A stretch of DNA of 34,771 nt from Octopus bimaculoides (lineage: Eukaryota). The notes under the pieces are model-generated. The model saw nothing but the letters and a program-made list of their open reading frames with translations. It did no database searches and was not told the origin of the DNA. The stretch spans positions 25,727,661 to 25,762,431 of the forward strand of contig NC_069003.1 of NCBI RefSeq assembly GCF_001194135.2. The letters are read 5' to 3'. The position numbers were made by a program, and so were the translations under genes. Shown one piece after another: positions 418 to 34,771 of this stretch (within the stretch, counting starts at the first letter, position 1; every line of letters begins with the position of its first letter).

Positions 418-746
418 TGNNNNNNNNNNNNNNNNNNNNNNNNNNNNNNNNNNNNNNNNNNNNNNNNNNNNNNNNNNNNNNNNNNNNNNNNNNNNNNNNN
501 NNNNNNNNNNNNNNNNNNNNNNNNNNNNNNNNNNNNNNNNNNNNNNNNNNNNNNNNNNNNNNNNNNNNNNNNNNNNNNNNNNNNNNNNNNNTTCTGTTCT
601 TTTTTTTTTCATTCAATGTTATAAAGGATTTGGAAAAAAAAAAATGTAGTTGGTAGTTTTTTTTTAAAATACTTTTATTTCTATATCTTTGTGTATATAT
701 TTGGTCGCTTCTCTTTTATTTGCACACTCACACATAACATATACAC

Positions 747-7493: not shown

Positions 7494-7762
7494 CGCGTAT
7501 TTTGCAGTGTACAACTCTATTGTGTCTGTGTATCTTTCTTACAGTGGACAACAGTAAGTATTTAATCTCTAATATTTTTTTAATGTTTTTCACNNNNNNN
7601 NNNNNNNNNNNNNNNNNNNNNNNNNNNNNNNNNNNNNNNNNNNNNNNNNNNNNNNNNNNNNNNNNNNNNNNNNNNNNNNNNNNNNNNNNNNNNNNNNNNN
7701 NNNNNNNNNNNNNNNNNNNNNNNNNNNNNNNNNNNNNNNNNNNNNNNNNNNNNNCTATTAGT

Positions 7763-12104: not shown

Positions 12105-12320
12105 AAGGCGGTAAGATGGCAGAATCGTTAACAAGCTGGGCAAAATGCTTAGCAGCATTTCGTCTGTCTTTATGTTCTGAGTTCAAATCCTGTCAGTTTC
12201 GGCATTGCTTTTTTATCCTTTCGAGATAGATAAAATAAGTACCAGTTGAATACCGGAGTCAATGTAATCAACTTATACCCTTACCCGAAATTGCTGGCCT
12301 TGTGCCAAAATTTGAAATCA
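12105..12320 (+). mobile_element. SINE family B copy
   Basis: Colinear with the reverse complement of 13214-13434. Confidence 0.85.
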
Positions 12321-12663: not shown

Positions 12664-12829
12664 NNNNNNNNNNNNNNNNNNNNNNNNNNNNNNNNNNNNN
12701 NNNNNNNNNNNNNNNNNNNNNNNNNNNNNNNNNNNNNNNNNNNNNNNNNNNNNNNNNNNNNNNNNNNNNNNNNNNNNNNNNNNNNNTATGGGAAGAAATG
12801 AGGGTTTGATCACGCATCAGAACGTTTGA

Positions 12830-13213: not shown

Positions 13214-13434
13214 TAATGATCCTTTCTACTGGAGGCACAAGGCCTCAAATTTGTAGGGAGGGGACTAGTCGATTACATTGACCCTAGTGTTTCACTCGTA
13301 CTTAATTTATCGACTCCGAAAGGACGAAAGGCGAAGTGGACCTCGGCGGAATTTGAACTCAGAACGTAGCGGCAGACGAAATACCGCTAAGAATTTCACC
13401 CGGCGTGCTAACGATTCTGCTAGCTCGCTGCCTT
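13214..13434 (-). mobile_element. tRNA-derived SINE, family B (core catcctttcggggtcgataaaataagtacc)
   Basis: Head aaggcggcgagctagcagaatcg, B box GAGTTCAAATTCC and the conserved core; several copies in the window. Confidence 0.88.
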
Positions 13435-15084: not shown

Positions 15085-15530
15085 GTGGTGAGCAGAGATA
15101 AGGTCCGTGGGCCGAGNNNNNNNNNNNNNNNNNNNNNNNNNNNNNNNNNNNNNNNNNNNNNNNNNNNNNNNNNNNNNNNNNNNNNNNNNNNNNNNNNNNN
15201 NNNNNNNNNNNNNNNNNNNNNNNNNNNNNNNNNNNNNNNNNNNNNNNNNNNNNNNNNNNNNNNNNNNNNNNNNNNNNNNNNNNNNNNNNNNNNNNNNNNN
15301 NNNNNNNNNNNNNNNNNNNNNNNNNNNNNNNNNNNNNNNNNNNNNNNNNNNNNNNNNNNNNNNNNNNNNNNNNNNNNNNNNNNNNNNNNNNNNNNNNNNA
15401 GGTTCCACAGCATGTGACATCCCAAATGAGGGGGCCTATCACCACGGAACAGGAAAATTGTCATACCGTCAGGCCTTTTACCGTCCCCTCGGTCTAGCTC
15501 CGCTGGCTCGCTCTGGAAAGGGAAGCCTGC
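15085..15530 (-). mobile_element. Restriction-like-endonuclease domain remnant of a CRE-like non-LTR element (spans an N gap)
   Basis: SAAGFPFQSEPAELDRGDGKRPDGMTIFLFRGDRP(+1 frameshift)LIWDVTCCGT matches the EPxGLxRxDGKRPDGxT..WDxT RLE motif. Confidence 0.75.
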
Positions 15531-15898
15531 AGCGGAATGATGTAGTGAGAGGGGCCTCGGCTTGGACTCTGGTGAATACAGAGACAGAGGTGGCAGGATA
15601 AAGGTTAAGGGGCGAGTAAAAAGTCAAGAGCTTTTGTGGGGTGGCCGGATTAGTGAGGGTGGTGGAGGAATACTAAGCAAGTACGGAATGGTACGGAGAG
15701 TTAAGAATAGCAAACCATTCTTCTCTGACACCCATGGAATTAGTGTTTGGGGAAGAATGCAAGATCGATGGACGGCTGTGTCTATTGAAGTCTTTGAGGA
15801 GGATGAATTCATGAGGGGATGAGTTATTTTAAATATAATACAAATAGTAAGAACTTCAGCAACGATTATAGTCACAGTTTTTAGAGGAAGTAATTCGT

Positions 15899-16055
15899 CG
15901 ATAGCATCGGCACCAGTACTTGTCTGCTACTTTTATCGACCCCCTGGAGGGATAAAGGACAAAGGTCACCTCGGCAGGATTTGAACGCAGAATGTAAAGA
16001 ACCAGAACAAATACCGTACGACGTTTCTTTCGACGCTAAAACGATTCTGCCAATC
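15899..16055 (-). mobile_element. Diverged SINE family B copy
   Basis: Core ttttatcgacccc and B-box region recognisable. Confidence 0.7.
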
Positions 16056-16575
16056 CATCGTCCTAACAACAGCAGCAACATCTACAGCAACAACAACAAT
16101 AACAATATAAAAATAACAATAACTGGCAACGACAACAACAATAATTGCTTCTTTATTTGCCACAAGGGCAACGATGAGGGAATATTACACGTATGAGTGA
16201 CAAAAAAACGGTGGAAGTGAAAAGAGATGATGCAGAACTAATTTTGAAACAAGCTGGCAACGAAAAACAGCTACAACGGACCAACGAAGGAACCTTACAA
16301 AGCTAGAATTACCCACAATGCCAAGTGTGTGTTGCCTCTCTTAGCTAAAGGGGCTACTTCGAAACCTGCGACTGTTCTACTTTGGTTATAAATTCATATT
16401 TATGCCAATAAATACTCGTACATATGCCTTTCGAAAAGCGAAGATCTTCAGGCGAAGAAAGCGAGCAGCTAGCACAACGTTCACAAACGTAACCTGTTTG
16501 CGTAACAGTAAAAATATACGAGAATTCTTCAGCGTTCAACATTTTACATTTCGTTGTTGTTATTTCAGTTTCCAG

Positions 16576-16618: not shown

Positions 16619-17294
16619 GTAAGAATTCAAANNNNNNNNNNNNNNNNNNNNNNNNNNNNNNNNNNNNNNNNNNNNNNNNNNNNNNNNNNNNNNNNNNNNN
16701 NNNNNNNNNNNNNNNNNNNNNNNNNNNNNNNNNNNNNNNNNNNNNNNNNNNNNNNNNNNNNNNNNNNNNNNNNNNNNNNNNNNNNNNNNNNNNNNNNNNN
16801 NNNNNNNNNNNNNNNNNNNNNNNNNNNNNNNNNNNNNNNNNNNNNNNNNNNNNNNNNNNNNNNNNNNNNNNNNNNNNNNNNNNNNNNNNNNNNNNNNNNN
16901 NNNNNNNNNNNNNNNNNNNNNNNNNNNNNNNNNNNNNNNNNNNNNNNNNNNNNNNNNNNNNNNNNNNNNNNNNNNNNNNNNNNNNNNNNNNNNNNNNNNN
17001 NNNNNNNNNNNNNNNNNNNNNNNNNNNNNNNNNNNNNNNNNNNNNNNNNNNNNNNNNNNNNNNNNNNNNNNNNNNNNNNNNNNNNNNNNNNNNNNNNNNN
17101 NNNNNNNNNNNNNNNNNNNNNNNNNNNNNNNNNNNNNNNNNNNNNNNNNNNNNNNNNNNNNNNNNNNNNNNNNNNNNNNNNNNNNNNNNNNNNACACACA
17201 CACACTTGAGTGTTGCATAAACAAATAAGTTATCAAGTTTTTTTCTTTCTTTATTCCTTTCTTTGTATTTTTTCTTTAATTTTCTTTTCAAAAG

Positions 17295-19226
17295 ATTTTG
17301 GTTGATGATGCCTATGATGACCTGGTACCAGACAGTTACAAAAACAATAACAACACCACCGCCACCACCACCACCACAACCAACAGCAGCAGCAGCAACA
17401 ACAACAACAACGGGAAGAAAGATGAGGTCAAGAGGAAAAGTAGGTCAGGGGAAATCTCCCTAGTAAAACCCGATGTAGACATAAGCTCAGAAAAAAACCG
17501 AACTCGAAAACTTTTTGAATTCGGTCGAAATAAAAGACAATTTGAAAGAAACCTGCAAGATCGCAAGAAGCGTGAACTCTTCTTAAAAAGTCGGCATTTA
17601 AGCTGTGAGTTCTTCACCTCGCTGAAGAATCCATATTGTGAGAATATGGCTGATATTTATCAATGTAATGTAGAAAGCGGATTTATTCTTGATGAGATTA
17701 ACAGAGTTATGGAAAATCTGTTCCAATTTCTGGATGCCGGCCTCAGTAAAGAAAGAGACGGCTTGGAATTTGCCAACGGCAACAATTTAACTTCCAAAGA
17801 TACTGCATGCAGTGAGATCCTTCGTTGCAGAGAACTTGGGTCTCTTCAGGATTCAACTCAAAATCTCGGAGAAAATCAAACGCATTCTGTTTCTCTGAGC
17901 GAAGAATTTCCAAGAATTGATGTTTATACAGACGCGGAGGAGGACGGTAAAGAGAGTGATTTGGAGGACGAGATTGGTATAAGGGTTGATACAGAGATAA
18001 AAGATGGCGAAGATGATACCATATCGTATTCTGATGACTATTCACTCGAATTCAATCGCAGCACTCACTTGGACATATTAGATCAAACCATGTTTAGTAC
18101 GTATTCCAATTCAGTTAGCAGCCTTAGAGAAGAGATATGTGAACGGTTGGATAGCTGCCAGACAGTGAGTTCTTACGTGTCAGCAGATGAAAATATCAAT
18201 GATAACACTGAAAACGACAGTGATGAAGCAGAGTATGCTGGGTCCTGCACCAGTAAGAATATCTCTGATAGTGCTACTAACCGGACCTACACATGTAATT
18301 ATGTCCCCAAAATAGTCAAAGAAAAGGATAAACATGAGGAAATTGTAGTTAATGATGAATATAACGACGACGACGACGACGACGACGATGATGATGCTAA
18401 TTATGACGATCTTAGTTTTGATAATGAAACAGACGCGACTGAAATCGACGAAAACGTGTTTGCAGACGACAACGTGTTTGCAGACGACAACGTGTTTGCA
18501 GACGACAACGTATTTGCAGACGACAACAACGACTACGATAATGATATGGGTGTCATCTGTGAAGATTTAGTGTTTCATCCGAACTCAAAGCATTCCGATA
18601 GTCCAAATGCCGAAGAAAGAAATGACGTAAATGTTGAATTATTGGCAATCAAAGAAAAACAACCAATGGTAAAGTTTGAGTTGGAATCGATAAATGAGGA
18701 AACATTAGAAAGTAAGAGTAACGAGATTCTAGAAATGGAGAACGAGGCAGCCGAAATGAAGAAAATAGCTGTACAAATTAAACACTGGGCTGAAAAAATT
18801 GAAAAGGTGGTTGTAAAAATTGAAAGCGAGGTTGTAAAAATTGAAAACGTGACTGAAGAAATTGGACAAAATATAGAACAAGATGTATATATGGAAACAA
18901 AGGATGAAGAAATCCAAAACAACTCTGAAGTAATTAGAAAAGATGATCAAAACGATAATGAGTTGGTAGAAAATGAAAGCAAAACTGTTCAAGTAGAATA
19001 CGATTGTAGTGAGATTGACATGAAGGAGACAAATTCTGTTTGGTTAACAGATGACGAAAGGGAATTAATTGCATCGCAGAGTCGAATGGAATTCTTGGAA
19101 GAATTGTCTGTAAATTACAGCATTCTTCAACGATTCTTGCTGATAAGCGATGATCCTACAACAGGAGCAATGATATTACCTGTTGTTCGTTGGATGTGGG
19201 ATATTTTTAAACGAATGCAATATTAG
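17295..19226 (+). CDS. Large coding exon of an unidentified acidic low-complexity protein (643 codons + stop); probably the last coding exon
   Basis: 1.9 kb open frame in AT-rich DNA, preceded by a long polypyrimidine tract and AAG| acceptor at 17294. The first in-frame Met is ~117 codons in, so splicing is implied. Poly-N/T/S/D runs; basic N-terminal part, D/E-rich body. No family recognised. Confidence 0.8.
   Translation: MLVDDAYDDLVPDSYKNNNNTTATTTTTTNSSSSNNNNNGKKDEVKRKSRSGEISLVKPDVDISSEKNRTRKLFEFGRNKRQFERNLQDRKKRELFLKSRHLSCEFFTSLKNPYCENMADIYQCNVESGFILDEINRVMENLFQFLDAGLSKERDGLEFANGNNLTSKDTACSEILRCRELGSLQDSTQNLGENQTHSVSLSEEFPRIDVYTDAEEDGKESDLEDEIGIRVDTEIKDGEDDTISYSDDYSLEFNRSTHLDILDQTMFSTYSNSVSSLREEICERLDSCQTVSSYVSADENINDNTENDSDEAEYAGSCTSKNISDSATNRTYTCNYVPKIVKEKDKHEEIVVNDEYNDDDDDDDDDDANYDDLSFDNETDATEIDENVFADDNVFADDNVFADDNVFADDNNDYDNDMGVICEDLVFHPNSKHSDSPNAEERNDVNVELLAIKEKQPMVKFELESINEETLESKSNEILEMENEAAEMKKIAVQIKHWAEKIEKVVVKIESEVVKIENVTEEIGQNIEQDVYMETKDEEIQNNSEVIRKDDQNDNELVENESKTVQVEYDCSEIDMKETNSVWLTDDERELIASQSRMEFLEELSVNYSILQRFLLISDDPTTGAMILPVVRWMWDIFKRMQY
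18453..18524 (+). repeat. Coding 18-bp tandem repeat x4 (NVFADD)
   Basis: aacgtgtttgcagacgac x3 plus aacgtatttgcagacgac. Confidence 0.95.
18795..18857 (+). repeat. Coding 21-bp (heptad) tandem repeat x3 (KIEKVVV/KIESEVV/KIENVTE)
   Basis: Units of the form aaaattgaaa...gttgta repeated in frame. Confidence 0.85.
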
Positions 19227-19725: not shown

Positions 19726-20871
19726 TTGGAGAAGAATTAGCTGTTTTGAAAGCCAATGGGCAGTCGTGGGATCTAATTGACACAACTAATTGATTAAAAT
19801 CGTGTCATCACAATTTAATTAGCTTGATTCAATTAGTTTTGGTGATGGTGAGGAACTGCAAGCATATTGGATTAATGTAACACCACTAGAGATTTCATCT
19901 TTGTAGATTTTGAGTAAATCATCCTGAAAAAGCTAACTCCTCTCCAAGCCGGCTTCATCCAAGAGGTTATAAAAAAGCGCGCCCGATGCTGTCCACATCA
20001 TTTACTGACATCTAAGCATGTCTTTAGGTGAAATGAAAATAAATATTCAATAATTGACTAAGTAAATGGAAATAAAACATTGAAACAAATTGCTGTTGAT
20101 CAATAATTTATTAATCGAACTAGAAAATGCCTTAAGTATGCAAGTCGTTCTCTCTGTTATATTTTAAAATTAAAAAAAAAATTTTCTAAGTAATAAATTT
20201 GTTTATAAGCAGTGTCTCCATGGACAAGTGAAGAAAGTTCTTTATCGCTGATGAAACACCAACACAAGATTGTGGCTCACCTGGCTGATCCACATGATTA
20301 AAACTATTCTTTTTCTTTTTGTCGACGAAAATTCACTCAATACGTTTATGTAGAGTATATACATATTTTTCAAGGAAATAGTTGACAGTGACTTTACCGT
20401 TCGTTGGCTTCATAACACTGAAATGCTTATATATATATATNNNNNNNNNNATATATATATATATAATACAAAAATGGGACAAGAGCACAAAACATCCAAA
20501 CAGTTAGGTGAAACAAAAAGGGACAACAAAAGATCCAGACAGACGATACAAGGAAAACAAGGACGGGTCATTTGGAGTTTTCAATCCTCAGTCGAGTTCC
20601 ATATTATCTTTGCAATTTCAGCTGGTTAAACTCGAGCTTGCTTCAATCTGGTCAGCCCCAAGGAAAAAATAAGCTAAGAGCATTACACTCCTTGGAATTC
20701 AAAAGAATTTTTAAAGTTTTATTTATATTCTTATAAAATTAATGTAGGATATAAAATATGGAATATATAGTATATATAGTAAAATGAAATGAAGTGTTGA
20801 ATGTCTTATTGAATAAATGAAATATTGAATATTAAATATTAAATATTAGAGTCCTCTAATATTTAATATTT

Positions 20872-21030
20872 AATTTTGTACAAGTCCAGCAATTACGAGG
20901 GAGGGCGTAAGTCGATTACATCAACTCCAGTATTCAACTGGTACTTATTTTATCAACCCCCCCCCCCCCNNNNNNNNNNNNNNNNNNNNNNCCAACAGGA
21001 TGAAAGGCAAAGTCAACCTCTGCGACATTT
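20872..21030 (-). mobile_element. Partial SINE family B copy
   Basis: gtcgattacatcaactccagtattcaactggtacttattttatcaacccc...ggatgaaaggcaaagtc. Confidence 0.75.
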
Positions 21031-21478: not shown

Positions 21479-22741
21479 TCTCCTTATTACACTACGCCAC
21501 AGGAATAATGAGGATTATGGTCATCAAGGGCTGAAAGGTAATATACACATTATATAGTGAGATTAAAGGTAACCAAATCATGAACTAAAAGGAACTGAAA
21601 TACATCCAGTATAACTTCACCAACAATAAATTATCATACATTACACACACGCACACACACACACGAATATAGATATTACCTTTTGGTATTAATACTGCTT
21701 GTGTCACTAATAGTTATTTTTTAATAAAGGCCATTGGCTTCTTGCGGCACCAAGGCCTGATTAGACACTATGATTCTTTCGTATAAATGGCGAGTGGCAC
21801 AGTCGCTGTTATTTCCAGCGGTCAGGTATCTACCATCGACAAGGCCAAGGTCTACTGATATCACGTTGATCTGATAGTCTCGGCAGCAGCGATAACGGTG
21901 ATTGTCTCCCGCTAGTGATGTAAACAAGAGTGCTTATATGCATCACACGACCGTATGAGAGGTTCTCTCGTGTTAACCACCGCAGCATTCTGTGTTCTAG
22001 CACAATTTCCGCTTTTAAGTGGTGACAAATATTACACACATANNNNNNNNNNNNNNNNNNNNNNNNNNNNNNNNNNNNNNNNNNNNNNNNNNNNNNNNNN
22101 NNNNNNNNNNNNNNNNNNNNNNNNNNNNNNNNNNNNNNNNNNNNNNNNNNNNNNNNNNNNNNNNNNNNNNNNNNNNNNNNNNNNNNNNNNNNNNNNNNNN
22201 NNNNNNNNNNNNNNNNNNNNNNNNNNNNNNNNNNNNNNNNNNNNCTCTCTCTCTCTTTCTCTCTTTTCCATATTTAAAACATCAACCGTATAAAACAAGG
22301 ACAAGTTCAGATCTGACTTTGGGCTACACAACAACACGGGGACAAGAAACATGACAGCTCCATCTACTGAAAAATTGGAGAAATTGATAAAGTACTGGGC
22401 CAACAAATTGATACAAATAATGTTTTATGTTCAGAATTTTCAAGTGTTGAGGAACATCCAGTGCCCCCCTCTGATCGAGTCCATCTTCGTGGCTTCTACC
22501 GGGGTAGAAAAACATACAGAAACAAAATGGACAACGGATAGAGTACATTATTTCTATATTGCATCCCACTGAACTCCTTATTATAAATCTCAGCACATCG
22601 ACCTTCAACTAGGGGGAGGAATTCTATGTCTGGAAGAATAAATCGGTGGATCACATCTCATCATTTGATCGAGTAAGCGGCGTGTCTTAGGCCTTCTCTA
22701 TCAACACTGACCATCAGCTGTATGATGACGAGCAGCAAAAA

Positions 22742-22890: not shown

Positions 22891-23115
22891 CAGTAATCCC
22901 TCGACTATCGCGGGGGTGTTACGTTCCAAAATCCCCGCGATAGGTGAAGATCCGTGAAGTAGAAACAATACTTACTGTATGTTTTTTTTAAAAATTATTT
23001 TTNNNNNNNNNNATGCAAAAAAAAAAAAAAAACCCCCAAAAATCCACAAAGGAATCGACATAAGCTTAAATAATAAACCGTGATATGTGAACCGCGATAT
23101 GGCGATGGACTACTG
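22891..23115. mobile_element. pogo/Tigger-like MITE
   Basis: TA|CAGTAATCCCTCGACTATCGCG ... CGCGATATGGCGATGGACTACTG|TA; imperfect TIRs and TA target duplication. Confidence 0.85.
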
Positions 23116-24883: not shown

Positions 24884-25220
24884 CATATGACATTTATCTG
24901 CATTGAAATTCATAGAATAAATGACCTTTTGTAATAAATAACTAGAGAAAACTTCGTATTGACAAGTGGAAAATTCGTAACCAAATTAATAAGAAATAGT
25001 AACTGATATGATTTGAATATCTGATTTAATGATTTTTCCTTTGAGTGCCTGGTATTAAATAAAACGTAATTCTGTTTTGACATACGTGAAATATCATAAT
25101 ATAAATCGTGTTGTGATTGCGTACAAATCATGTATGTCACTGAATAAAGCCATTTAAAATGAATTTAATTACTTTAATTGTTATTTTGTGGTATTTTCCT
25201 TGAGACTCGTTACATTTTTA

Positions 25221-25310
25221 CCGGAAAAAATGACTCAAGGGAGGTGACTCTCAACTGACTTGATTAAATCAAGGGAGGCAACTACGATTTATTTATTAAA
25301 ATATGGCGGA
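25221..25310 (+). promoter_or_regulatory. URM1 proximal promoter/5'UTR motifs (CCGGAA ETS-like, TGACTCA AP-1, AATATGGCGG YY1-like over the ATG)
   Basis: Motif matches only; the YY1-like site overlapping the start codon is common in housekeeping genes. Confidence 0.3.
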
Positions 25311-25334
25311 TCTTCCTGTCACGCTGGAATTCAG
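25303..25334 (+). CDS. URM1: URM1 (ubiquitin-related modifier 1) coding exon 1: MADLPVTLEF(S)
   Basis: ATG at 25303; donor AG|GTTTGT at 25335, phase 2. Joins exon 2 to give the URM1 motif LEFSGGAELLF. Confidence 0.93.
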
Positions 25335-25986
25335 GTTTGTTTTGTCGACAGATATTTTTCATTGTATTTTCTGTTCTCTTCCACTCTATTCGATTTGCCC
25401 GATCATTTAAATTTAGGCGCTAGTTTTTTCTGTAACTTTTAAATTGTGTACATAGTTTGTAATCAAGATTCGACCTGTTTTAATTAGATTGTATACTACT
25501 TTCTATCGATCAAGCAAGCACTGTGACATAAATAATTGCTTTAATATCAATATCCTAGCCTCCGTTGCAAGTTTGACAAAGAATTTTTAAAAATTAACTT
25601 ACAGTTTAGGAATCGTAGTTAAGGGTTACAAAAGTTGACTTACGTTGTGTAAGAGAGATAACAGGTGATTTATAAATAATTTGTTAGAGTTCCGGTCTCC
25701 GGTGGATACAGTAACGGCTTTAGTTATAGATTCAAGAAAGGAATATGGATATTAGCCTCCCAGGTTCAAACACAACCTGCTATTTGGCAACGAATAACAT
25801 CTCGCTGTCACCCGGCCTTGGTGTACGGGTAAAGCCATGGAAAGCGGCGTGATGGTTGTGCAACCTCGGCGAAAGAGCCATCCATTAACCAGCGGCGATA
25901 TCTGCTGGACAGATGAAGCTCAGGATGTCAATAAGTTCCCGAATTGTTTTCTATTACTATCGTTCTAGAAATCTGATGTCTATTAC

Positions 25987-26385
25987 CTTTTACTTGTTTC
26001 AGTCATAGATTACGGCCATGCTGGGGCACTGCCTCGAAGAATTTTTAATTAACCCCAAGCAAAAGTTTATCAAACAAAAGTTATATTTCCATACCTTAGC
26101 AGTTCAGCCAAAAAGAAGAAAAAAAAAAACAAAAAAAACAGACCAATAGAATACTTAAGTTTTCTCTTTTTATGCCCGATAATTATTCTGTTGGTCTGTT
26201 TTTTTTCTTTTTTTTTGCACACACGTACACACACATGATGGGCTTCTTTCAGTTTCTGTCTCTCAAATCCATTCTCAAGGCTTTGGTTGGCCTGGGGCTA
26301 TAGTAAAGGACACTTGACCAATGTGGCACGCAGTGGGATTGAACCAAGAAAAATGTGGCTGGGAAGCAAGCTTCTTAACATACAG
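25987..26385 (-). mobile_element. SINE family C copy (rearranged middle), URM1 intron 1
   Basis: Both ends match 11413-11807. Confidence 0.8.
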
Positions 26386-26954
26386 CTAAATATAGCAGTC
26401 AAATTTTTCCATGAATCACCCAGTACCATCTACAATAATAAAAGCAAAATTCTGTCTGTCCATCTGGGACCCCAATATCTCACTTGCTCTATATAGACAT
26501 GTTATACCTTTTTGGAATCAGGATGATCCTGGGATTGAGAATCTACCTTTCATTTGGTTTTTGAACATCTAAACATTGGGATCTGATTTAAAAGCATCTG
26601 GGTTGCTATTTCTAGCAGGTAAAGCTTGACTGATGCACACTATCTTGGCTGGCGTTTACCAGATGCTATCAGAGATCAAGGGGGAGATAAATAACATTCA
26701 CTTTGTTAATTTTATGTCAGAACAAAAACTTTGGGACAAATTGGAATTCAACTTGGGACTGGAACAATAGAATGATTGCATTACAGAATTCTCATTCGTT
26801 CTTAACCTCTGAGCAAACACTGTCAGGGCATATAGTCATTATAGACGTATTATAGTCATGCTATTTAGCTGTCTTCAGTTTTGCCTGGTGTGCTAACGAT
26901 TTTGCCAACTTGCCGCCTGAACCTATTGTAAAAAGGATTGTTATTATTATTGTT

Positions 26955-27050
26955 ACTAGCTGGCCCCGTGCCGTCAAAAATGATGGCTAATTGTAGTATT
27001 TTATAGATAATTATGGATGGTAAATCAAATTGATACTCATGTCAATGTTA
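26955..27050 (+). mobile_element. Possible non-autonomous Helitron/Helentron terminus
   Basis: ACTAGCTGGCCCCGT followed by the hairpin gccgtca-aaaa-tgatggc after a T-rich site. Confidence 0.3.
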
Positions 27051-27157
27051 TCCAGTGGTTGTCTTTTGAGATGTGACATCAATCATCATTTGTTACTGAA
27101 AGAACGCTGGTTCACATATACAAACATTCACATACTTCCCTTGTACATGCACATACA

Positions 27158-27542
27158 GTGGAGGCGCAATGGCCCAGTGGTTAGGGCAGCGGACTCGCGG
27201 TCATAGGATTGTGTTTTCGATTCCCAGACCGGGTGTTGTGAGTGTTTATTGAGCGAAAACACCTAAAGCTCCATGAGGCTCCGGCAGGGGATGGTGGGCG
27301 AACCCTGCTGTACTCTTTCACCACAACTTTCTCTCACTCTTACTTCCTGTTTCTGTTGTGCCTGTAATTCAAAGGGTCAGCCTTGTCACACTCTGTGTCA
27401 CGCTGAATATCCCCGAGAACTACATTAAGGGTACACGTGTCTGTGGAGTGCTCAGCCACTTGCACGTTAATTTCACAAGCAGGCTGTTCCGTTGACCGAT
27501 CAACTGGAACCCTCGACGTCGTAAGCGACGGAGTGCCAACAA
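27158..27542 (+). mobile_element. tRNA(Arg)-derived SINE, family A1, full length with 13-bp TSD, in URM1 intron 1
   Basis: A/B boxes; flanked by direct repeat acatgcacataca (27145-27157 and 27543-27555). Confidence 0.93.
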
Positions 27543-27925
27543 ACATGCACATACATACACACACATATACTCACACAGAGTTGAAATGCTGTTTGATTTT
27601 TTCTTTTCAGCATTGAATGCTCACCATTCCACTTCCATTGCACACACACACACGCACACACAAACATTCATGTACCCTCCTTTTACTTACACACACACAC
27701 ATGCTCACATAGAGTTGAAATGCTCCCACTACCAGTTTGCCATCACCCCTTCCTTTCTCATTCATATATTGTGATGAAGAAAAACACGAGTATTATTACA
27801 GTAGATTTATTAAGCTAGTGCAGTGTCATAAGCAGTGGAGTGTCAGAATATTTAGCTTTATCCATTCGATCAATGATTGTCAACTTGTTGGAATTTATGT
27901 AATGATCCTAGTTTCTCTTTGACAG

Positions 27926-27999
27926 TGGTGGTGCTGAACTCCTTTTCGACAAAATCAAGAAACATCAGATCAAATTGCCCCTCGAAGATAACAAACAAT
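27926..27999 (+). CDS. URM1: URM1 exon 2: (S)GGAELLFDKIKKHQIKLPLEDNKQ(W)
   Basis: Acceptor tttctctttgacag; 74 nt; donor T|GTAAAT, phase 1. Carries the GGAELLF hallmark. Confidence 0.96.
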
Positions 28000-28346
28000 G
28001 TAAATACATCATTATCTAAATTCTCAGTGTTGTTGTTGTTGTTGTTGTTGTTGTAATTGGTTTGTTAATCAAGTATTTGGTATGTGGTCGATAGGTAACA
28101 GAGTTGATTGTGGACAAAAATACCTTGTGGTATTTGACTATGTGGCTTTACATCCTTCAGGCATTGACGTGAGTGTAGTTTTGAAGGCAGTGCCCCAGCA
28201 TCGCCACACTCCAAGGACTGAAGCCAGTACATTTTGTTGAGATCAAAATTTAGTTATATGGCTGATATGAAGAGCACATACACACACACACACACACTCA
28301 CACACGCATATGTAAACACATGTGCACACACATGCACACACAAATG

Positions 28347-28380
<34 letters not shown>

Positions 28381-28383
<3 letters not shown>

Positions 28384-28437
28384 TCCAACCCATGCTAGCA
28401 TGGAAAGCGGACGTTAAACGATGATGATGATGATGAT
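28381..28437 (+). repeat. LINE/SINE 3'-tail fragment ending in (GAT)n
   Basis: gtccaacccatgctagcatggaaagcggacgttaaacgatgatgat; inverted copy at 29981-30028. Confidence 0.75.
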
Positions 28438-29048
28438 NNNNNNNNNNNNNNNNNNNNNNNNNNNNNNNNNNNNNNNNNNNNNNNNNNNNNNNNNNNNNNN
28501 NNNNNNNNNNNNNNNNNNNNNNNNNNNNNNNNNNNNNNNNNNNNNNNNNNNNNNNNNNNNNNNNNNNNNNNNNNNNNNNNNNNNNNNNNNNNNNNNNNNN
28601 NNNNNNNNNNNNNNNNNNNNNNNNNNNNNNNNNNNNNNNNNNNNNNNNNNNNNNNNNNNNNNNNNNNNNNNNNNNNNNNNNNNNNNNNNNNNNNNNNNNN
28701 NNNNNNNNNNNNNNNNNNNNNNNNNNNNNNNNNNNNNNNNNNNNNNNNNNNNNNNNNNNNNNNNNNNNNNNNNNNNNNNNNNNNNNNNNNNNNNNNNNNN
28801 NNNNNNNNNNNNNNNNNNNNNNNNNNNNNNNNNNNNNNNNNNNNNNNNNNNNNNNNNNNNNNNNNNNNNNNNNNNNNNNNNNNNNNNNNNNNNNNNNNNN
28901 NNNNNNNNNNNNNNNNNNNNNNNNNNNNNNNNNNNNNNNNNNNNNNNNNNNNNNNNNNNNNNNNNNNNNNNNNNNNNNNNNNNNNNNNNNNNNNNNNNNN
29001 NNNNNNNNNNNNNNNNNNNNNNNNNNNNNNNNNNNNNNNNNNNNNTTA

Positions 29049-29386
29049 CAGTTTTATATTTAAGAGATGAGGAATTACGTACATTATTTACATTATTTAT
29101 GTTTGACGGATATTTGTCCTCATCTTGTTTGTTGTTAACACAACGTTTTGATTGATATACCATCCAGCCTTCATCAGGTGTCTTGGGGGAAATTTCGAAC
29201 CTGGGTTCTCATTCCTAAGGTATTTTTCAATGTTATTATTATTATTGTTATTGTTCAGGTCACTGTTTGGAATCGAACTCGGAATGTTGGGGTTAGTAGC
29301 CTGCGCTCTTAACCACTACACCATATACCCACAAGCATATGGCGTAAATAATGTACATAATTCCTCATTTCTTAAATATAGAACTG
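29049..29386 (-). mobile_element. TA-flanked 43-bp-TIR element containing a tRNA-like head and a degenerate hammerhead motif
   Basis: TIRs 29049-29091 and 29344-29386 (40/43 match), TA on both sides, termini CAGTT/AACTG. Minus-strand A box TGGTGTAGTGG (29313-29323) and B box GAGTTCGATTCC (29269-29280). Confidence 0.85.
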
Positions 29387-29491
29387 TACTCTGATCTCTT
29401 CTTGAGATTTTACAACTGGCTACTTTGCTTGATATGTATATAATATTTGCATGGATTTGTTACATAGTCTCTCATTAAACATCTTCTTCAG

Positions 29492-29573
29492 GGAAAATCA
29501 AAGATCTGCTACCATGGATCCGTGATAATATGTTGAAAGAAAGACCTGAACTTTTCCTTCAAGGACACAGTGT
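29492..29573 (+). CDS. URM1: URM1 exon 3: (W)[26 protein letters not shown](V)
   Basis: Acceptor catcttcttcag; 82 nt; donor GT|GTAAGT. Carries the LKERPELF motif typical of URM1. Confidence 0.97.
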
Positions 29574-29663
29574 GTAAGTAATGTTTTGCGACCCCCAGGT
29601 CTGAAACATCGTATTCCTTTTCTACCCATCATGTACAAAATAATTATCCAACTTCATCAACTT

Positions 29664-29897
29664 CTTATTTCTTTATTGCCCACAAGGGGCTAAACATAGA
29701 GGGGACAAACAAGGACAGACAAAGGGATTAAGTCGATTACATCGACCCCAGTGCGTAACTGGTACTTATTTAATCGACCCCGAAAGGATGAAAGGCAAAG
29801 TTGATCTTGGCAGAATTTGAACTCAGAATGTAGCAGCAGACGAAATACTGCTATGCATTTTGCCCGGTGTGCTAACGTTTCTGCCAGCTCGTCGCCT
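29664..29897 (-). mobile_element. SINE family B copy in URM1 intron 3
   Basis: Same head, B box and core as the other B copies. Confidence 0.88.
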
Positions 29898-29951
29898 CAC
29901 CAACTTCTTGCCAACACAAAACCCCAATGGCTTCCTGTGACCCTATTTTAA

Positions 29952-30206
29952 CCCTTTAGCATTCAAATTACTCTGTCAAATCATCATCATCGTTTAACGT
30001 CCGCTTTCCATGCTAGCATGGGTTGGACTGTAGTACGTATTTATTTGCATTATTCTGAATTAATCGCATATCATCTCATAGCTTCAAGATTTTTATGATG
30101 TAATTGTTTTACATTTAGAATAGCATTTTAGGGTAGGCATGAGAGGCAGGATCTGGTCAATTTGAACATAATTGGGCTGAATATGGTCAGTTTGAATGCT
30201 AAAGAG
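29952..30206. mobile_element. piggyBac-like MITE (TTAA|CCCTTTAGCATTCAAA ... TTTGAATGCTAAAGAG) with a nested LINE-tail fragment
   Basis: 16-bp TIRs with one mismatch; TTAA on the left. The right TSD is truncated by the inverted URM1 duplicate. Confidence 0.7.
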
Positions 30207-30427
30207 TTGGTGTATATAGATTTATTTAACCTCCACGTAACGTTGATATAAATACAATTTTATCATTTGATTCAATTTGATATTCCAGTTTACCCTGCAA
30301 TGGATGAGAGCAAAAAATGGTATTTAGATAGAGGGATACACAAACAACTACTGGAATATCACATACAACCATACTTACACTTACACACATACATCCACAC
30401 TCACATCTGTATGTATAGATACCTATA
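30206..30427 (-). pseudogene. URM1: Inverted partial duplicate of URM1 intron-4 end, exon 5 and 3' flank, inside intron 3
   Basis: Reverse complement aligns ungapped to ~31734-31956, with 12 mismatches over the 215 bp counted. The exon copy (30226-30294) reads GKLEYQIESNDKIVFISTLRGG* behind an intact ttgcag acceptor. Confidence 0.95.
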
Positions 30428-30597
30428 TACCAACTCTTTGTTTGAAAAAGTAAAGGAGTCTTTGATTGCTGTAGAATGGCTTGTGATTATAATCCCAGCC
30501 CATTCGGGGTTTACTTCAGGTAAAACAATAACAACAACAACAACAACAGTAATTGGAGTGAAAATATTTCTTCAGCTTTGTTTATTTTATTCTTCAG

Positions 30598-30646
30598 GCG
30601 ACCTGGAATTTTAGTCCTAATCAATGATGCAGACTGGGAATTAATG
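30598..30646 (+). CDS. URM1: URM1 exon 4: (V)RPGILVLINDADWELM
   Basis: Acceptor ttttattcttcag; 49 nt; donor ATG|GTAAGT. Carries the RPGILVLINDADWEL signature. Confidence 0.98.
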
Positions 30647-30721
30647 GTAAGTCTTCATGTCATCCATTTTTCCCTCTCTCTCTTTCGGAGAGGCACAAGC
30701 ACATACACAGACATATACACA

Positions 30722-30860
30722 CACGGCAGTAACTTCCGCCTACCACATTCAATCACAAGGCTTCGGTCGGCCCAGGGCTATAGCAGAAGACACTTGCCCA
30801 AAGTGCCACGCAGTGGAACTGAACCCGAAACCATGTAGCTGGGAAGCAAGCTTCCTACAT
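30722..30860 (-). mobile_element. SINE family C 5' half, URM1 intron 4
   Basis: cacaaggcttcggtcggcccagggctatagcagaagacacttgcccaaagtgcc matches family C. Confidence 0.85.
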
Positions 30861-31154
30861 ATTTGTTTATTAGTTTTTCAATTCATTAATCAATGCATGC
30901 ATGTATTAGATGAATATGTTTGTTAAAGAACTGTTTTACTAGCAGATCCCTTTCCTGTCACTAACTCTTACTTACCTGTTTTTCAAGTAATAGGTCCCTA
31001 ATTTCACACCACTATCAAAGGTGAGAAGAGGATTTGTTGATAGGCAAATGACAACACCACAACCACTTGTAGCAAGCAACATTTGTAGAGGGAAAATGTA
31101 AGCGCACACACACGCATGTACACACACACACACACACACACACTCACATGCGCA

Positions 31155-31310
31155 ATTGGCTTCTTTTAGTTTCCTTCTACCAAGGCCACTAACAAGGCTT
31201 TGGTTGACCCAGGGTTATATTAGAAGACACTTGCCCAAAGTGCCATGCAGTGGGACTGAACCTGAAACCATACAGTTGGGAAACAACCTTCTTAATCACA
31301 ATGCCATACT
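31155..31310 (-). mobile_element. SINE family C 5' half, URM1 intron 4
   Basis: Same motif set as the other C copies. Confidence 0.85.
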
Positions 31311-31867
31311 TGCGCATATATACTCATGTATTGTGTAACCATGTACACACACACACTAGTACACATTCAGTCACATACATACATACTAAACACACACACA
31401 CCCACACACACACACACACACACAGAGTTATGCATGGGCTAATAAAATGTATTGAAGAAAAAGAAATAAAAATCATGATTAATTCAAGGAAAGTATACTT
31501 GTAATCTTGTAATTAAAAGAATCATTAATGGTAATTCTTGTCAGAAAGAACAAAAGAGACAACTTTGAAAACCAAATTTCATTAAAGAATGAAGACACAA
31601 CAGTTGGTAGTAATTATGATGCTTAGTTAGTAAAGAGAAGACAACTATAGACATAGTTGAATCTTATTTGATCTCCTCAGTGGAACAGTCTGACCTGCAT
31701 GTACCAGACTTTAGATTAGCTGAAATAATATAAATATAGATATTTATACATACAGATGTGTGTGTGGATGTATGTGTGTATGTGTAAGTAAGGTTGTGTG
31801 TAATATTCCAGTAGTTGTTTGTGTATCCTTCTATCTAAATACCATTTTTTGCTCTCTTCCATTGCAG

Positions 31868-31936
31868 GGTGAACTGGAATATCAAATTGAATCAGACGAT
31901 AAAATTGTATTTATATCAACGTTACATGGAGGTTAA
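31868..31936 (+). CDS. URM1: URM1 exon 5 (terminal): GELEYQIESDDKIVFISTLHGG*
   Basis: Acceptor ctctcttccattgcag; ends with the C-terminal di-glycine ISTLHGG then TAA. Total CDS 32+74+82+49+69=306 nt = 101 aa + stop. Confidence 0.98.
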   Translation, partial: GELEYQIESDDKIVFISTLHGG

Positions 31937-31941
31937 ATAAA
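31936..31941 (+). terminator. Putative URM1 polyadenylation signal AATAAA overlapping the stop codon
   Basis: GGT TAA ATAAA; U/GU-rich tract (tgttgttaattattcttttcttttattttgtt) ~30-60 nt downstream. Confidence 0.5.
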
Positions 31942-31996
31942 TCTATATACACCAACCAATTAACGACATGTTGTTAATTATTCTTTTCTTTTATTT

Positions 31997-32200
31997 TGTT
32001 ACTTGTTTCAGTCAAACTGTGGCCATGCTGCAGCACCACCTTAAAGAATTTTAGTCGAAGAATCAACCCCAGTACTCATTTTTTTTTAAAGTCTGGTACT
32101 TATTCTGTTGGTCTCTTGCTGAACTGCTAGGTTATGTGAATGTAAACACACCAACACTGGTTGTCAAGTAATGGTGGGGACAAATACAACACAGGACACA
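31997..32200 (-). mobile_element. SINE family C 3' half just downstream of URM1
   Basis: acttgtttcagtca...ggccatgctgcagcaccacc...ggtgggacaaa-like segment matches 11413-11600. Confidence 0.8.
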
Positions 32201-33012
32201 CACACATGCATATATATATATATATATATATANNNNNNNNNNNNNNNNNNNNNNNNNNNNNNNNNNNNNNNNNNNNNNNNNNNNNNNNNNNNNNNNNNNN
32301 NNNNNNNNNNNNNNNNNNNNNNNNNNNNNNNNNNNNNNNNNNNNNNNNNNNNNNNNNNNNNNNNNNNNNNNNNNNNNNNNNNNNNNNNNNNNNNNNNNNN
32401 NNNNNNNNNNNNNNNNNNNNNNNNNNNNNNNNNNNNNNNNNNNNNNNNNNNNNNNNNNNNNNNNNNNNNNNNNNNNNNNNNNNNNNNNNNNNNNNNNNNN
32501 NNNNNNNNNNNNNNNNNNNNNNNNNNNNNNNNNNNNNNNNNNNNNNNNNNNNNNNNNNNNNNNNNNNNNNNNNNNNNNNNNNNNNNNNNNNNNNNNNNNN
32601 NNNNNNNNNNNNNNNNNNNNNNNNNNNNNNNNNNNNNNNNNNNNNNNNNNNNNNNNNNNNNNNNNNNNNNNNNNNNNNNNNNNNNNNNNNNNNNNNNNNN
32701 NNNNNNNNNNNNNNNNNNNNNNNNNNNNNNNNNNNNNNNNNNNNNNNNNNNNNNNNNNNNNNNNNNNNNNNNNNNNNNNNNNNNNNNNNNNNNNNNNNNN
32801 NNNNNNNNNNNNNNNNNNNNNNNNNNNNNNNNNNNNNNNNNNNNNNNNNNNNNNNNNNNNNNNNNNNNNNNNNNNNNNNNNNNNNNNNNNNNNNNNNNNN
32901 NNNNNNNNNNNNNNNNNNNNNNNNNNNNNNNNNNNNNNNNNNNNNNNNNNNNNNNNNNNNNNNNNNNNNNNNNNNNNNNNNNNNNNNNNNNNNNNNNNNN
33001 NNNNNNNNNNNN

Positions 33013-33050
<38 letters not shown>

Positions 33051-33221
33051 TTATAGATCTCTACCAAAAATTTGGTAAAAATATTGTACCTGTTATCAAC
33101 GTAGCAAAATTTTCATATGAAAGGTTGTTTATCATATAATTTTGTGTGCATATCAATTTAAATAAGAGCTATAACACGATCCATCGTAAAAACTTTTTTA
33201 ATGACCTATGTACATTTCCAT

Positions 33222-33625
33222 ACCCAAAATTTCTCAAGTTCTGATAGTGACTCAGCAATAAGAACAAGATCATTGGTGTCGAGAAGCTCCCAAGGGCAGC
33301 CATTCTTAAATTCCTCAGTTATAGCTTGGAGGAGTATGATAAACAAGAGGGGTTAAGAACTGATCCCTGGTGGACTCCTGCTTGTACACTAAATTCCTTG
33401 CTATATTCATTGGCAACTTTCACCTTACTGGCAGCGTCCTTATAAATGGGTTTTACAGCTCTCATCAACCATCCATCTATCCCTGGATTCTGCATCACCC
33501 ACAGTAAAGGGAGTGGGAAACCTTGTCAAAGGCTTTCTCCATGTGAACAAAAGTCAGATGCAGAGGTTTATTTTTGGCCAAATATCTCTTCTGCATCTGC
33601 CTCACCAGGAAGATACATTTCTTAG
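33222..33625 (-). mobile_element. RTE-clade LINE reverse-transcriptase fragment (pseudogenised)
   Basis: IFLVRQMQKRYLAKNKPLHLTFVHMEKAFDKV (DLEKAFD motif), GVHQGSVLN (QG motif) and CPWELLDTNDLVLIAES (decayed YADD). Confidence 0.9.
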
Positions 33626-33726
33626 CCACACAGGGCTCAACGAAGATGGAAGATAACATTGGTGGTACTTCTACCCGGTACAAATCCAAGTTGCATCTCT
33701 CTATGCTAAATCTCCTATATATATAT

Positions 33727-34100
33727 ATGATGGGCTTCTTTCAGTTTCATTTGACCAAATCCACTCACAAGGCCTTGGTCAACCTGAGGTTATAGTAGAA
33801 GACACTTGCCCAAGGTGCCACACAGTGGGACTGAACCTGGAAGCATGTGGTTGGGAAGCAAACTTCTTACTACACAGTCATGCCTGTGCCTATTTATATT
33901 TCTATCCAAATCTTTATGCTACGATTTCAAATCTCTGACGGAATGAGATTTCAGTTTCCATCAACCAAATACTCTGACGAGGCTCCAATCCACCCGAGGC
34001 TATAGTGGAAGACACTTGCGCCAGGTGCCTAACTGGGGCATTCAACCTAAAGTCACATGGTTGAGAAGCGAACTTTTTAATTACAGAACCACGTCTGTAC
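33727..34100 (-). mobile_element. Two adjacent SINE family C 5' halves (33727-33890 and ~33946-34100)
   Basis: The motif gaggttatagtagaagacacttgcccaaggtgcc occurs twice, the second copy diverged. Confidence 0.8.
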
Positions 34101-34737
34101 CTCTACTGCATATATGTGTATATATGTGGTTGTCTCCATATGTGCATCTTACTGTGAAATCATAACTTTGAAAACACACCCACACACACACAGACACCAA
34201 CGAGAAAAGATTCCACATGAGCAAGTTTTTATTTTATATCTTGTGGCCATCGCAGTGTTGACGATATAGATTTTTCTCCAGGCGGGAATATAATGAATAT
34301 ATAGTATTAGTCATGTACAGTGGGTGGCGTGGTCGGATTGTTTGGAGTATAATAATAATAAATTTTAGATTCCAACCAAATAAAATCTTCCCTTTCAAAA
34401 TCTTTTAAATGAACATTATTTAGATAATGAATGGAAATAATTAGTAATTATAAATCTTCTCAGGCGAAAAATGATGAATATTTCCTCATATTTGTTGACT
34501 GGAGTTTATTAATTTTTTTTGGTAGACTTTAATTAGATTCTGTCGTTTGTTTTTGTATATTGCATTTCCTCTGAGAAAGCTCTGTGTGTGTGTGTGTGCT
34601 TGTTTTTTTGTTTGTGTGTATAAACATGACAATATTAATATATATGTTATAGACAGTACACCCTATACAAACTGTGTGGAGAAATTATTCATTTATGTAT
34701 GTATGTATTTATGTATGTATGTATGTATATATATATA

Positions 34738-34771
<34 letters not shown>

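What the first reader, a model, noticed from the sequence alone, without database searches (positions are those of the whole stretch)
30206..31956. URM1 carries an inverted copy of its own last exon in intron 3: a built-in ~215-bp pre-mRNA duplex
Seen: 30206-~30427 is the ungapped reverse complement of ~31734-31956 (12 mismatches in 215 bp). It covers the intron-4 pyrimidine tract, the exon-5 acceptor, all 23 codons, the stop and the AATAAA. The two arms are ~1.3 kb apart with exon 4 in the loop, so both lie in the same nascent transcript. Established: long intramolecular duplexes are ADAR substrates, and coleoid cephalopods recode extensively by A-to-I editing. Inference: this gene-specific, non-repeat complementary arm could mask the 3' splice site and poly(A) signal, promote exon-4 skipping (49 nt, frameshift, loss of the GG), or direct hyper-editing (AG acceptor to IG; UAA to UII = Trp read-through past the essential C-terminal Gly). 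That would tune Urm1-dependent tRNA thiolation and urmylation.
Basis: partly seen in the sequence, partly recalled or inferred. Interest (0 to 1): 0.8.

Follow-up and report, generated by a model that had tools for sequence, protein, structure and literature searches.

The report
Inverted last-exon copy inside octopus URM1
The two-spot octopus URM1 gene does carry a 223-bp backwards copy of its own last exon in an upstream intron, but the copy looks like a lineage-specific by-product of DNA break repair that has decayed at the neutral rate, so a regulatory role is possible but unsupported.

Summary
Window 30206-30428 is the ungapped reverse complement of 31734-31956: 223 nt, 13 mismatches, 94.2%. 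The window is Octopus bimaculoides chromosome CM046623.1, and the five-exon URM1 model translates exactly to XP_014781616.1. Arm B holds the last 134 nt of intron 4, all of exon 5, the stop and the AATAAA. Arm A lies in intron 3, 169 nt upstream of the 49-nt exon 4. Folding the 1861-nt pre-mRNA stretch gives 215 in-register pairs (duplex -345 kcal/mol).

The copy is absent from O. sinensis, which has a clean empty site, and from Argonauta hians. With O. sinensis as outgroup, the 13 differences split 7 on arm A and 6 on arm B. Five of the 9 transitions keep a G·U pair, as chance predicts. Arm divergence (5.8%) is no lower than species divergence in this locus (7.4%).

The junctions show 3-4-nt microhomologies and an 11-nt snap-back tract, with no target-site duplication and no poly(A). 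This fits a templated insertion made during break repair soon after the roughly 34-My split.

The duplex is a plausible ADAR substrate and processing block in transcripts that still carry intron 3. Nothing indicates selection for it. Editing, exon skipping and any "tuning" remain untested.

The parts
25303..25334 (+). URM1 exon 1 (ATG, 32 nt of CDS)
   Evidence: tblastn with O. sinensis URM1. The spliced CDS equals XP_014781616.1.
27926..27999 (+). URM1 exon 2
   Evidence: AG/GT boundaries
29492..29573 (+). URM1 exon 3
   Evidence: AG/GT boundaries
30201..30208 (.). Left flank of the insertion (AAAGAGTT), conserved in O. sinensis. Its last 3 nt (GTT) are microhomology with the source (AAC, 31954-31956).
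   Evidence: Empty-site alignment and junction check
30206..30428 (-). Arm A: inverted copy of the intron 4 end, exon 5, the stop, the AATAAA and 15 more nt, lying in intron 3 of URM1
   Evidence: It is absent at the orthologous site in O. sinensis. Seven derived substitutions.
30429..30439 (.). Snap-back tract ACCAACTCTTT. It is the reverse complement of 30201-30213 minus one AC. Its last 4 nt (CTTT) coincide with the right flank seen in O. sinensis.
   Evidence: (I16). In the spot check, 0 of 4209 sampled positions had a reverse-complement 11-mer at that offset.
30598..30646 (+). URM1 exon 4 (49 nt), in the 1305-nt loop between the arms
31734..31956 (+). Arm B: the source segment (last 134 nt of intron 4, exon 5 and 20 nt of 3' sequence). 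It is bounded by an 8-nt inverted repeat, ATATAGAT / ATCTATAT.
   Evidence: The O. sinensis orthologue is L001 20696-20912. Six derived substitutions.
31868..31936 (+). URM1 exon 5 CDS (22 codons plus TAA, ending ...STLHGG*)
31936..31941 (+). AATAAA overlapping the stop codon, the likely poly(A) signal
   Evidence: The hexamer overlaps or abuts the stop in O. bimaculoides, O. sinensis and Argonauta hians, although the flanks do not align.

Best explanation
The feature is a real, lineage-specific inverted micro-duplication. I infer it arose in the O. bimaculoides lineage when a DNA break in URM1 intron 3 was repaired by microhomology-primed copying. The broken end ...AAAGAGTT primed on AAC at 31954-31956, 1.5 kb downstream, and copied the opposite strand back to 31734. 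At the short inverted repeat ATATAGAT/ATCTATAT the new strand snapped back on itself and recopied its own first bases and 5 nt of the left flank, giving ACCAACTCTTT. It then rejoined the right flank at CTTT, with loss of about 10 bp of the target. Since then both arms have accumulated substitutions at the neutral rate. At the RNA level, in any nascent transcript whose intron 3 is still present when exon 5 is made, the arms are predicted to form a duplex of about 215 bp. That duplex would hide the intron 4 acceptor, exon 5, the stop and the poly(A) signal. It would be a substrate for promiscuous ADAR editing, and a fraction of transcripts would probably be lost or mis-processed. I read this as a tolerated by-product, not a selected regulator. 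What is shown: the repeat, its absence in relatives, the junction sequences, the even polarised substitutions and the predicted fold. What is inferred: the repair pathway, duplex formation in vivo, editing and processing interference, and neutrality.
For: Repeat. Species and gene model. Empty site in O. sinensis (AAAGAGTT|AAACTAAATA|CTTTGTTTG), with collinear flanks at 94.9% identity on the right and interrupted by gaps on the left. No copy in Argonauta. Junction microhomologies and the snap-back tract. There is no target-site duplication, no poly(A), and 134 nt of intron is included. In contrast, a genuine SINE-like insertion in the same intron (29667-29894) has a target-site duplication and other copies in the window. 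Polarisation gives 7 changes on arm A, 6 on arm B and none ambiguous; there are 9 transitions, 5 of which leave G·U against 4.5 expected. Arm divergence is 5.83% against 7.40% O. bimaculoides-O. sinensis non-coding divergence in the locus, Fisher p = 0.50. With a split of about 34 My (PMC10700109), the copy is roughly 27 My old. The copy keeps the ancestral AAT (Asn) where exon 5 now has GAC, so it cannot be a recent assembly artefact. Fold: MFE -642 kcal/mol with 215 in-register pairs, against -411 to -422 when arm A is shuffled. Templated inverted insertions flanked by microhomology, with serial template switches, are described for MMBIR and for synthesis-dependent MMEJ (PMC8421209; PMC5728401 and PMC11724301).
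Against: No RNA data were available, so duplex formation, editing and processing effects are only predicted. There are just two outgroups and no sister species, so selection within the O. bimaculoides clade cannot be excluded. Thirteen substitutions give little power: a two-fold slowdown would not be detected. The copied tract (220 nt, from 1.5 kb away) is longer and more distant than the typical reported MMBIR or Pol-theta templated insertion. The ancestral target sequence is inferred from one species. Arm B ends about 15 nt after the AATAAA, near where mRNA cleavage is expected. A purely DNA-templated model does not predict that coincidence.
Confidence: 0.6

Rival explanations
1. The arm is a selected cis-regulatory element, acting as a giant editing-site complementary sequence or splice and poly(A) mask. 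It tunes URM1 output through regulated editing (acceptor AG, stop codon, His99), exon-4 skipping or intron-4 retention.
For: A near-perfect 215-bp duplex is predicted over functionally critical signals. The arrangement has persisted for about 0.8 of the time since the ~34-My split without deletion. An A·C mismatch places A31926 (His CAT) opposite C30236, a context ADARs favour (established knowledge), and editing there would give LHGG to LRGG.
Against: The arm is absent from O. sinensis and Argonauta. Substitutions fall 7:6 on the two arms, and every one breaks or weakens a pair. There is no excess of G·U-preserving changes. Arm divergence is not below the neutral level. URM1 is a conserved housekeeping gene whose relatives manage without the arm. 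No paper links URM1 to cephalopod editing.
Confidence: 0.12
2. The repeat is real but inert at the RNA level. Intron 3, with arm A, is spliced out and degraded before arm B is transcribed about 1.3 kb later, so the duplex essentially never forms.
For: Arm A ends 169 nt upstream of the exon 4 acceptor, and Pol II must still transcribe 1.1-1.3 kb before arm B exists. Neutral decay is exactly what an inert sequence would show.
Against: It is established from nascent-RNA studies in flies and mammals that many introns remain unspliced for kilobases of further transcription. Inverted repeats 1-2 kb apart are routinely edited in other animals (PMC9989829 uses a ±2-kb window). An excised lariat could also still pair in trans.
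Confidence: 0.2
3. This rival concerns the origin only. The copy was reverse-transcribed from the 3' end of an unspliced, cleaved URM1 pre-mRNA and inserted at a break, giving an RNA-templated, 5'-truncated retrocopy.
For: Arm B ends 15 nt after the conserved AATAAA, near the expected cleavage site. Retrocopies are commonly 5'-truncated.
Against: There is no poly(A) tract at the copy's 3' end (the left junction is AAAGA|GTTGG) and no target-site duplication. The copy includes 134 nt of intron. The snap-back tract and microhomologies fit DNA synthesis from the broken end. A real retroposed SINE in the same intron shows a target-site duplication.
Confidence: 0.08
4. The hairpin is processed by Dicer into endogenous siRNAs that silence URM1, in the manner of an hpRNA or proto-miRNA locus created by inverted duplication of its target.
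For: This is the same genesis as Drosophila hpRNAs and young plant miRNAs (own knowledge). The long, near-perfect stem covers coding sequence.
Against: The loop is 1.3 kb and the hairpin lies inside the target's own pre-mRNA. There are no small-RNA data. There is no Rfam match. No conservation is seen.
Confidence: 0.05
5. Arm A is an assembly artefact, such as a chimeric or fold-back join.
For: The assembly is gap-rich: 15 N runs in the window, with gaps at 28438-29045 and 32233-33012 flanking the contig. I found no independent assembly or contig.
Against: An artefactual fold-back would be essentially identical to its source. Here the arms differ at 13 sites, 7 of them derived in arm A, and arm A keeps ancestral states that the real exon has lost. 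Both arms and their flanks lie in one gap-free contig that is collinear with O. sinensis.
Confidence: 0.03

Closest known systems
Intronic editing-site complementary sequences (ECS) for ADAR recoding, for example the intron 11 ECS of GluA2 Q/R and the Drosophila syt/para ECSs (own knowledge)
   Same: An intronic sequence pairs with a coding exon in the pre-mRNA, so editing must precede splicing.
   Different: Known ECSs are short and imperfect, lie next to the edited exon, and are conserved together with it. This arm is a 223-nt near-perfect copy, lies two introns upstream, covers splice and poly(A) signals, and is absent from the nearest available relative. No editing has been shown.
Reverse-complementary matches or inverted SINE/Alu pairs in the introns flanking an exon, which promote back-splicing and exon skipping (PMC8330042)
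   Same: Complementary sequences on either side of exon 4 loop it out. In C. elegans zip-2, such matches promote both the circular RNA and the skipped transcript.
   Different: The arms come from the gene's own exon, not from a repeat family. The downstream arm also buries the acceptor that skipping would need. The looped exon is only 49 nt. The zip-2 match is conserved and this one is not.
Microhomology-flanked templated inverted insertions (MMBIR templated insertions, synthesis-dependent MMEJ with snap-back synthesis, Pol-theta end joining; PMC8421209, PMC5728401, PMC11724301)
   Same: An inverted copy of a nearby template, 3-6-nt microhomology at each switch, a second switch (snap-back), a small deletion at the target, and no target-site duplication.
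   Different: The copied tract (220 nt) and the template distance (1.5 kb) are larger than the 10-50 nt within about 100 bp typical of those studies. The pathway cannot be assigned from sequence alone.
hpRNA and young miRNA loci born by inverted duplication of their target gene (own knowledge: Drosophila hpRNAs; Allen et al. 2004 for plants)
   Same: An inverted duplicate of coding sequence creates a long hairpin against the parent gene.
   Different: Here the hairpin sits inside the parent's own pre-mRNA with a 1.3-kb loop. There is no small-RNA evidence.

Membership tests
ADAR editing-site complementary sequence (ECS) | An intronic sequence that base-pairs with the target exon in the same pre-mRNA | tested here: met
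   The MFE of 30150-32010 has 215 in-register pairs between arms A and B, and the duplex energy is -345 kcal/mol. This is a prediction only.
ADAR editing-site complementary sequence (ECS) | A-to-I editing observed at sites within the duplex | not testable with these tools
   No RNA-seq was reachable. There is no URM1 entry in the supplements of the editome paper I searched and no relevant paper.
ADAR editing-site complementary sequence (ECS) | ECS and exon conserved or co-varying across related species | tested here: not met
   The arm is absent from O. sinensis (empty site) and from Argonauta. Substitutions split 7:6 and all of them weaken pairing.
Flanking-intron reverse-complementary matches driving circRNA or exon skipping | Complementary sequences in the introns on both sides of the affected exon | tested here: met
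   Arm A is in intron 3. Arm B includes the last 134 nt of intron 4. Exon 4 lies in the 1305-nt loop.
Flanking-intron reverse-complementary matches driving circRNA or exon skipping | Back-splice or skipped junctions detected | not testable with these tools
   No transcript data.
Templated insertion by microhomology-mediated template switching (MMBIR / SD-MMEJ) | The insert is an inverted copy of a nearby template on the same chromosome | tested here: met
   The source is 1.5 kb downstream, with 94% identity after roughly 27 My.
Templated insertion by microhomology-mediated template switching (MMBIR / SD-MMEJ) | Microhomology at each junction or switch point | tested here: met
   The microhomologies are GTT (left), CTATAT or the 8-nt inverted repeat (snap-back), and CTTT (right). 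The ancestral target is inferred from O. sinensis alone.
Templated insertion by microhomology-mediated template switching (MMBIR / SD-MMEJ) | No transposition hallmarks (target-site duplication, terminal repeats of a family, poly(A)) | tested here: met
   None are present. A SINE-like insertion in the same intron does show a target-site duplication and multiple copies.
Processed or 5'-truncated retrocopy | Intronless, with a poly(A) tail and a target-site duplication | tested here: not met
   The copy contains 134 nt of intron 4 and has no poly(A) and no target-site duplication.
Interspersed repeat (SINE/MITE) pair | Additional copies elsewhere in the genome | tested here: inconclusive
   There are no further copies in the 34.8-kb window, the 29-kb O. 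sinensis locus or the 28-kb Argonauta locus. The only other hits are microsatellite-like matches to nt 1-68. The whole genome could not be searched.

The most novel reading that the evidence does not exclude
In the O. bimaculoides lineage, a break-repair accident created at one stroke a perfect editing-complementary arm of about 220 bp against the last exon of URM1. The octopus now uses it as a cis-switch, possibly sensitive to temperature or tissue. The switch would act by ADAR editing (for example His99 to Arg, turning LHGG into the ubiquitin-like LRGG, or stop to Trp) or by masking the acceptor and poly(A) signal, and so would set how much active Urm1 is made.
Probability: 0.1. Interest if true: 0.65.

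Novelty: new member of a known kind. Interest (0 to 1): 0.3.

Why it matters
This is a clean, datable natural example of one repair event giving a housekeeping gene a long intramolecular dsRNA over its own coding end, splice acceptor and poly(A) signal, in an animal with very active ADARs. O. sinensis supplies the natural "empty" allele. The pair therefore makes a ready-made test of what a new 220-bp duplex does to editing, splicing and 3'-end formation in cephalopods. It is also a caution: a striking complementary arm can persist for tens of millions of years while evolving exactly as neutral DNA does.

Tried and rejected
1. I looked for independent contigs carrying the arm. A protein search with the 54-aa antisense ORF of arm A returned no candidates. 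Exact look-ups of both arm ORFs returned nothing. Only one O. bimaculoides assembly is on record, and it is identical to the window.

2. I looked for more cephalopod URM1 loci. Only O. sinensis and Argonauta hians appeared among 2537 homologues. Argonauta intron 3 is a tandem-repeat array and cannot be aligned, so it cannot polarise the target site.

3. The retrocopy origin is rejected: there is no poly(A), no target-site duplication, and intron sequence is included.

4. The transposon or MITE reading is rejected. The 17-19-nt 'terminal inverted repeat' of arm A (I16) is explained by the source's own ends plus the snap-back tract, and no other copies were found.

5. The other '100% inverted repeats' in the window turned out to be runs of N, that is, assembly gaps.

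6. The Rfam and tRNA scans of 25000-34771 were empty.

7. Literature searches for URM1 editing in cephalopods, and for an ECS arising by inverted duplication, found nothing.

8. The mismatches show no bias toward pair-preserving (G·U) changes and no excess of A-to-G.

Full report
**1. The observation**

The repeat finder reports arms 30206-30428 and 31734-31956: 223 nt, 94% complementary, 1305 nt apart. A direct comparison gives an ungapped alignment with 13 mismatches. Self-blastn of the gene region (25000-32200) gives E = 1.5e-96. This is the only long, complex inverted match in that region.

Other 'perfect' inverted repeats in the window are runs of N, i.e. assembly gaps. Both arms lie on one gap-free contig, 29046-32232.

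**2. Where it is**

- The window is identical to Octopus bimaculoides GCA_001194135.2, chromosome CM046623.1.
- The URM1 exons are 25303-25334, 27926-27999, 29492-29573, 30598-30646 and 31868-31936. All introns are GT-AG.
- The spliced product is exactly XP_014781616.1.
- Arm A lies in intron 3 (1024 nt) and ends 169 nt before exon 4.
- Arm B is the last 134 nt of intron 4 (1221 nt), all of exon 5 (22 codons plus TAA) and 20 nt beyond.
- An AATAAA overlaps the stop. The same overlap occurs in O. sinensis (TAAATAAA) and Argonauta hians (TGAATAAA), although the flanks do not align. It is therefore very likely the real poly(A) signal.
- Exon 4 is 49 nt. Skipping it gives a frameshifted ...HSVVNWNIKLNQTIKLYLYQRYMEVK* tail with no GG.

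**3. Relatives**

A protein search found cephalopod URM1 only in O. sinensis (98% identity) and Argonauta hians (79%). I fetched both loci.

In O. sinensis, arm B has a single orthologue (L001 20696-20912) and no inverted copy. The flanks of arm A align collinearly with O. sinensis intron 3, at 94.9% identity on the right and with gaps on the left. They meet at an empty site. O. sinensis reads ...GCTAAAGAGTT AAACTAAATA CTTTGTTTGAAAAAG.... O. bimaculoides reads ...GCTAAAGAGTT [227 nt] CTTTGTTTGAAAAAG....

Argonauta has no copy either. Its intron 3 is a tandem array that cannot be aligned.

**4. History read from the substitutions**

With O. sinensis as outgroup, all 13 arm differences polarise cleanly: 7 on arm A and 6 on arm B.

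- In the exon part, arm A changed Glu to Lys and His to Arg.
- The real exon changed AAT (Asn, shared with O. sinensis and Argonauta) to GAC (Asp), while arm A still reads AAT.

A fold-back assembly artefact could not produce this pattern.

Nine differences are transitions and four are transversions. In the RNA duplex they give 5 G·U, 4 A·C and 4 transversion mismatches. Half of random transitions keep a wobble pair, so 4.5 G·U pairs are expected and there is no pair-preserving bias.

Arm divergence is 5.83% (13/223). O. bimaculoides-O. sinensis non-coding divergence across the locus is 7.40% (180/2433). The two do not differ significantly (Fisher p = 0.50).

The two lineages split about 34 My ago (Jiang et al. 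2022, as cited in PMC10700109). The insertion is therefore roughly 0.8 of that age, with wide error, and shows no slowdown that would indicate selection or gene conversion.

**5. How it arose (inferred)**

The left flank ends in GTT, which matches AAC at 31954-31956. The copy then runs to 31734.

The source segment is bounded by a perfect 8-nt inverted repeat, ATATAGAT and ATCTATAT. After ...CTATAT the insert continues ACCAACTCTTT. This is the reverse complement of 30201-30213 (AAAGAGTTGGTGT) minus one AC, meaning the new strand recopied its own start and 5 nt of the left flank. Its last four bases, CTTT, coincide with the right flank. Ten bases present in O. sinensis are missing.

There is no target-site duplication and no poly(A). 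By contrast, an O. bimaculoides-specific SINE-like element in the same intron (29667-29894) has a CAACTTCTT target-site duplication and other copies in the window.

This is the signature of microhomology-primed templated insertion with snap-back synthesis, as described for MMBIR and synthesis-dependent MMEJ (PMC8421209; PMC5728401 and PMC11724301). The copied tract here is longer (220 nt) and its template more distant (1.5 kb) than is typical.

One loose end remains. Arm B stops 15 nt after the AATAAA, about where cleavage is expected. An RNA-templated origin therefore cannot be fully dismissed, but the junctions argue against it.

**6. What it should do at the RNA level (predicted)**

| Fold | Energy (kcal/mol) |
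|---|---|
| 30150-32010 (1861 nt), MFE, 215 in-register A:B pairs | -642 |
| Two arms as a duplex | -345 |
| Same stretch with arm A shuffled (5 trials) | -411 to -422 |
| Arm A alone | -35 |
| Arm B alone | -49 |

The arrangement meets the criterion for a potential dsRNA region used in a 22-species editome study: at least 80% identity over at least 50 nt within 2 kb (PMC9989829).

From established ADAR biology, such a duplex would be edited promiscuously. A31926 (His CAT) faces C30236, an A·C mismatch that ADARs favour, and editing there would give LHGG to LRGG. A duplex over the polypyrimidine tract, the AG and the AAUAAA should hinder U2AF and CPSF binding.

All of this requires that intron 3 is still present when arm B is transcribed, 1.1-1.3 kb after exon 4. 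That is plausible for a fraction of transcripts but unknown in octopus.

**7. Verdict**

The feature is a real, old, lineage-specific templated inverted duplication.

The most likely reading is a tolerated, neutrally decaying by-product that may cause some hyper-editing and loss of nascent URM1 transcripts. RNA-level tests and sister-species sequencing would settle the question.

Noticed in passing
window 420-591, 1706-1796, 2940-3381, 4616-5584, 6228-6669, 7594-7754, 12664-12786, 15117-15399, 16632-17193, 20441-20450, 20970-20991, 22043-22244, 23003-23012, 28438-29045, 32233-33012: There are fifteen runs of N (4877 nt in total). They show up as '100% complementary inverted repeats' and as very low GC in mechanical scans. 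Two of the gaps have the same length, 442 nt. Any repeat or composition finding at these coordinates is an artefact.
   Followed up: yes
window 29667-29894: An O. bimaculoides-specific SINE-like insertion in URM1 intron 3, flanked by a target-site duplication of about 9 nt (CAACTTCTT). It is absent at the orthologous O. sinensis site. Related copies lie at 13267-13427, 12114-12282 and 20902-20960.
   Followed up: partly
window 26218-26382, 30734-30857, 31131-31295: Three copies of another short interspersed element (75-81% identity) lie in URM1 introns 1 and 4, all in the same orientation. They therefore add no further inverted pairs to the pre-mRNA.
   Followed up: partly
window 31934-31941; L001 20890-20897; L002 17873-17880: The poly(A) hexamer overlaps the URM1 stop codon in all three octopods (TAAATAAA, TAAATAAA, TGAATAAA). 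This implies an unusually short 3' UTR conserved across deep octopod divergence.
   Followed up: partly
window 31895-31897: The exon 5 codon changed at two positions (AAT Asn to GAC Asp) in the O. bimaculoides lineage after the duplication. The intronic copy (30265-30267, reverse strand) preserves the ancestral AAT.
   Followed up: partly
window 31803-31812 and 31873-31882: A perfect 10-nt local inverted repeat (ATATTCCAGT / ACTGGAATAT) bridges the intron 4 acceptor. Eight of its 10 nt are kept in O. sinensis. It could form a small hairpin enclosing the 3' splice site, independent of arm A.
   Followed up: no
window 17298-19226 (+): A 642-aa acidic, low-complexity ORF is the last exon of an annotated 1685-aa protein with no Pfam hit. 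It ends about 6 kb upstream of URM1 on the same strand. I did not identify the gene.
   Followed up: no
L002 about 15620-16150 (Argonauta hians URM1 intron 3): The intron is largely a tandem array of a unit of roughly 47 nt (CCATGGAACAGGTTGTACTGGTTTACATGGTACCAGTAGCAGGTAGCTGACCTGA...), preceded by a (CAT)n tract. It is unrelated to Octopus intron 3.
   Followed up: no
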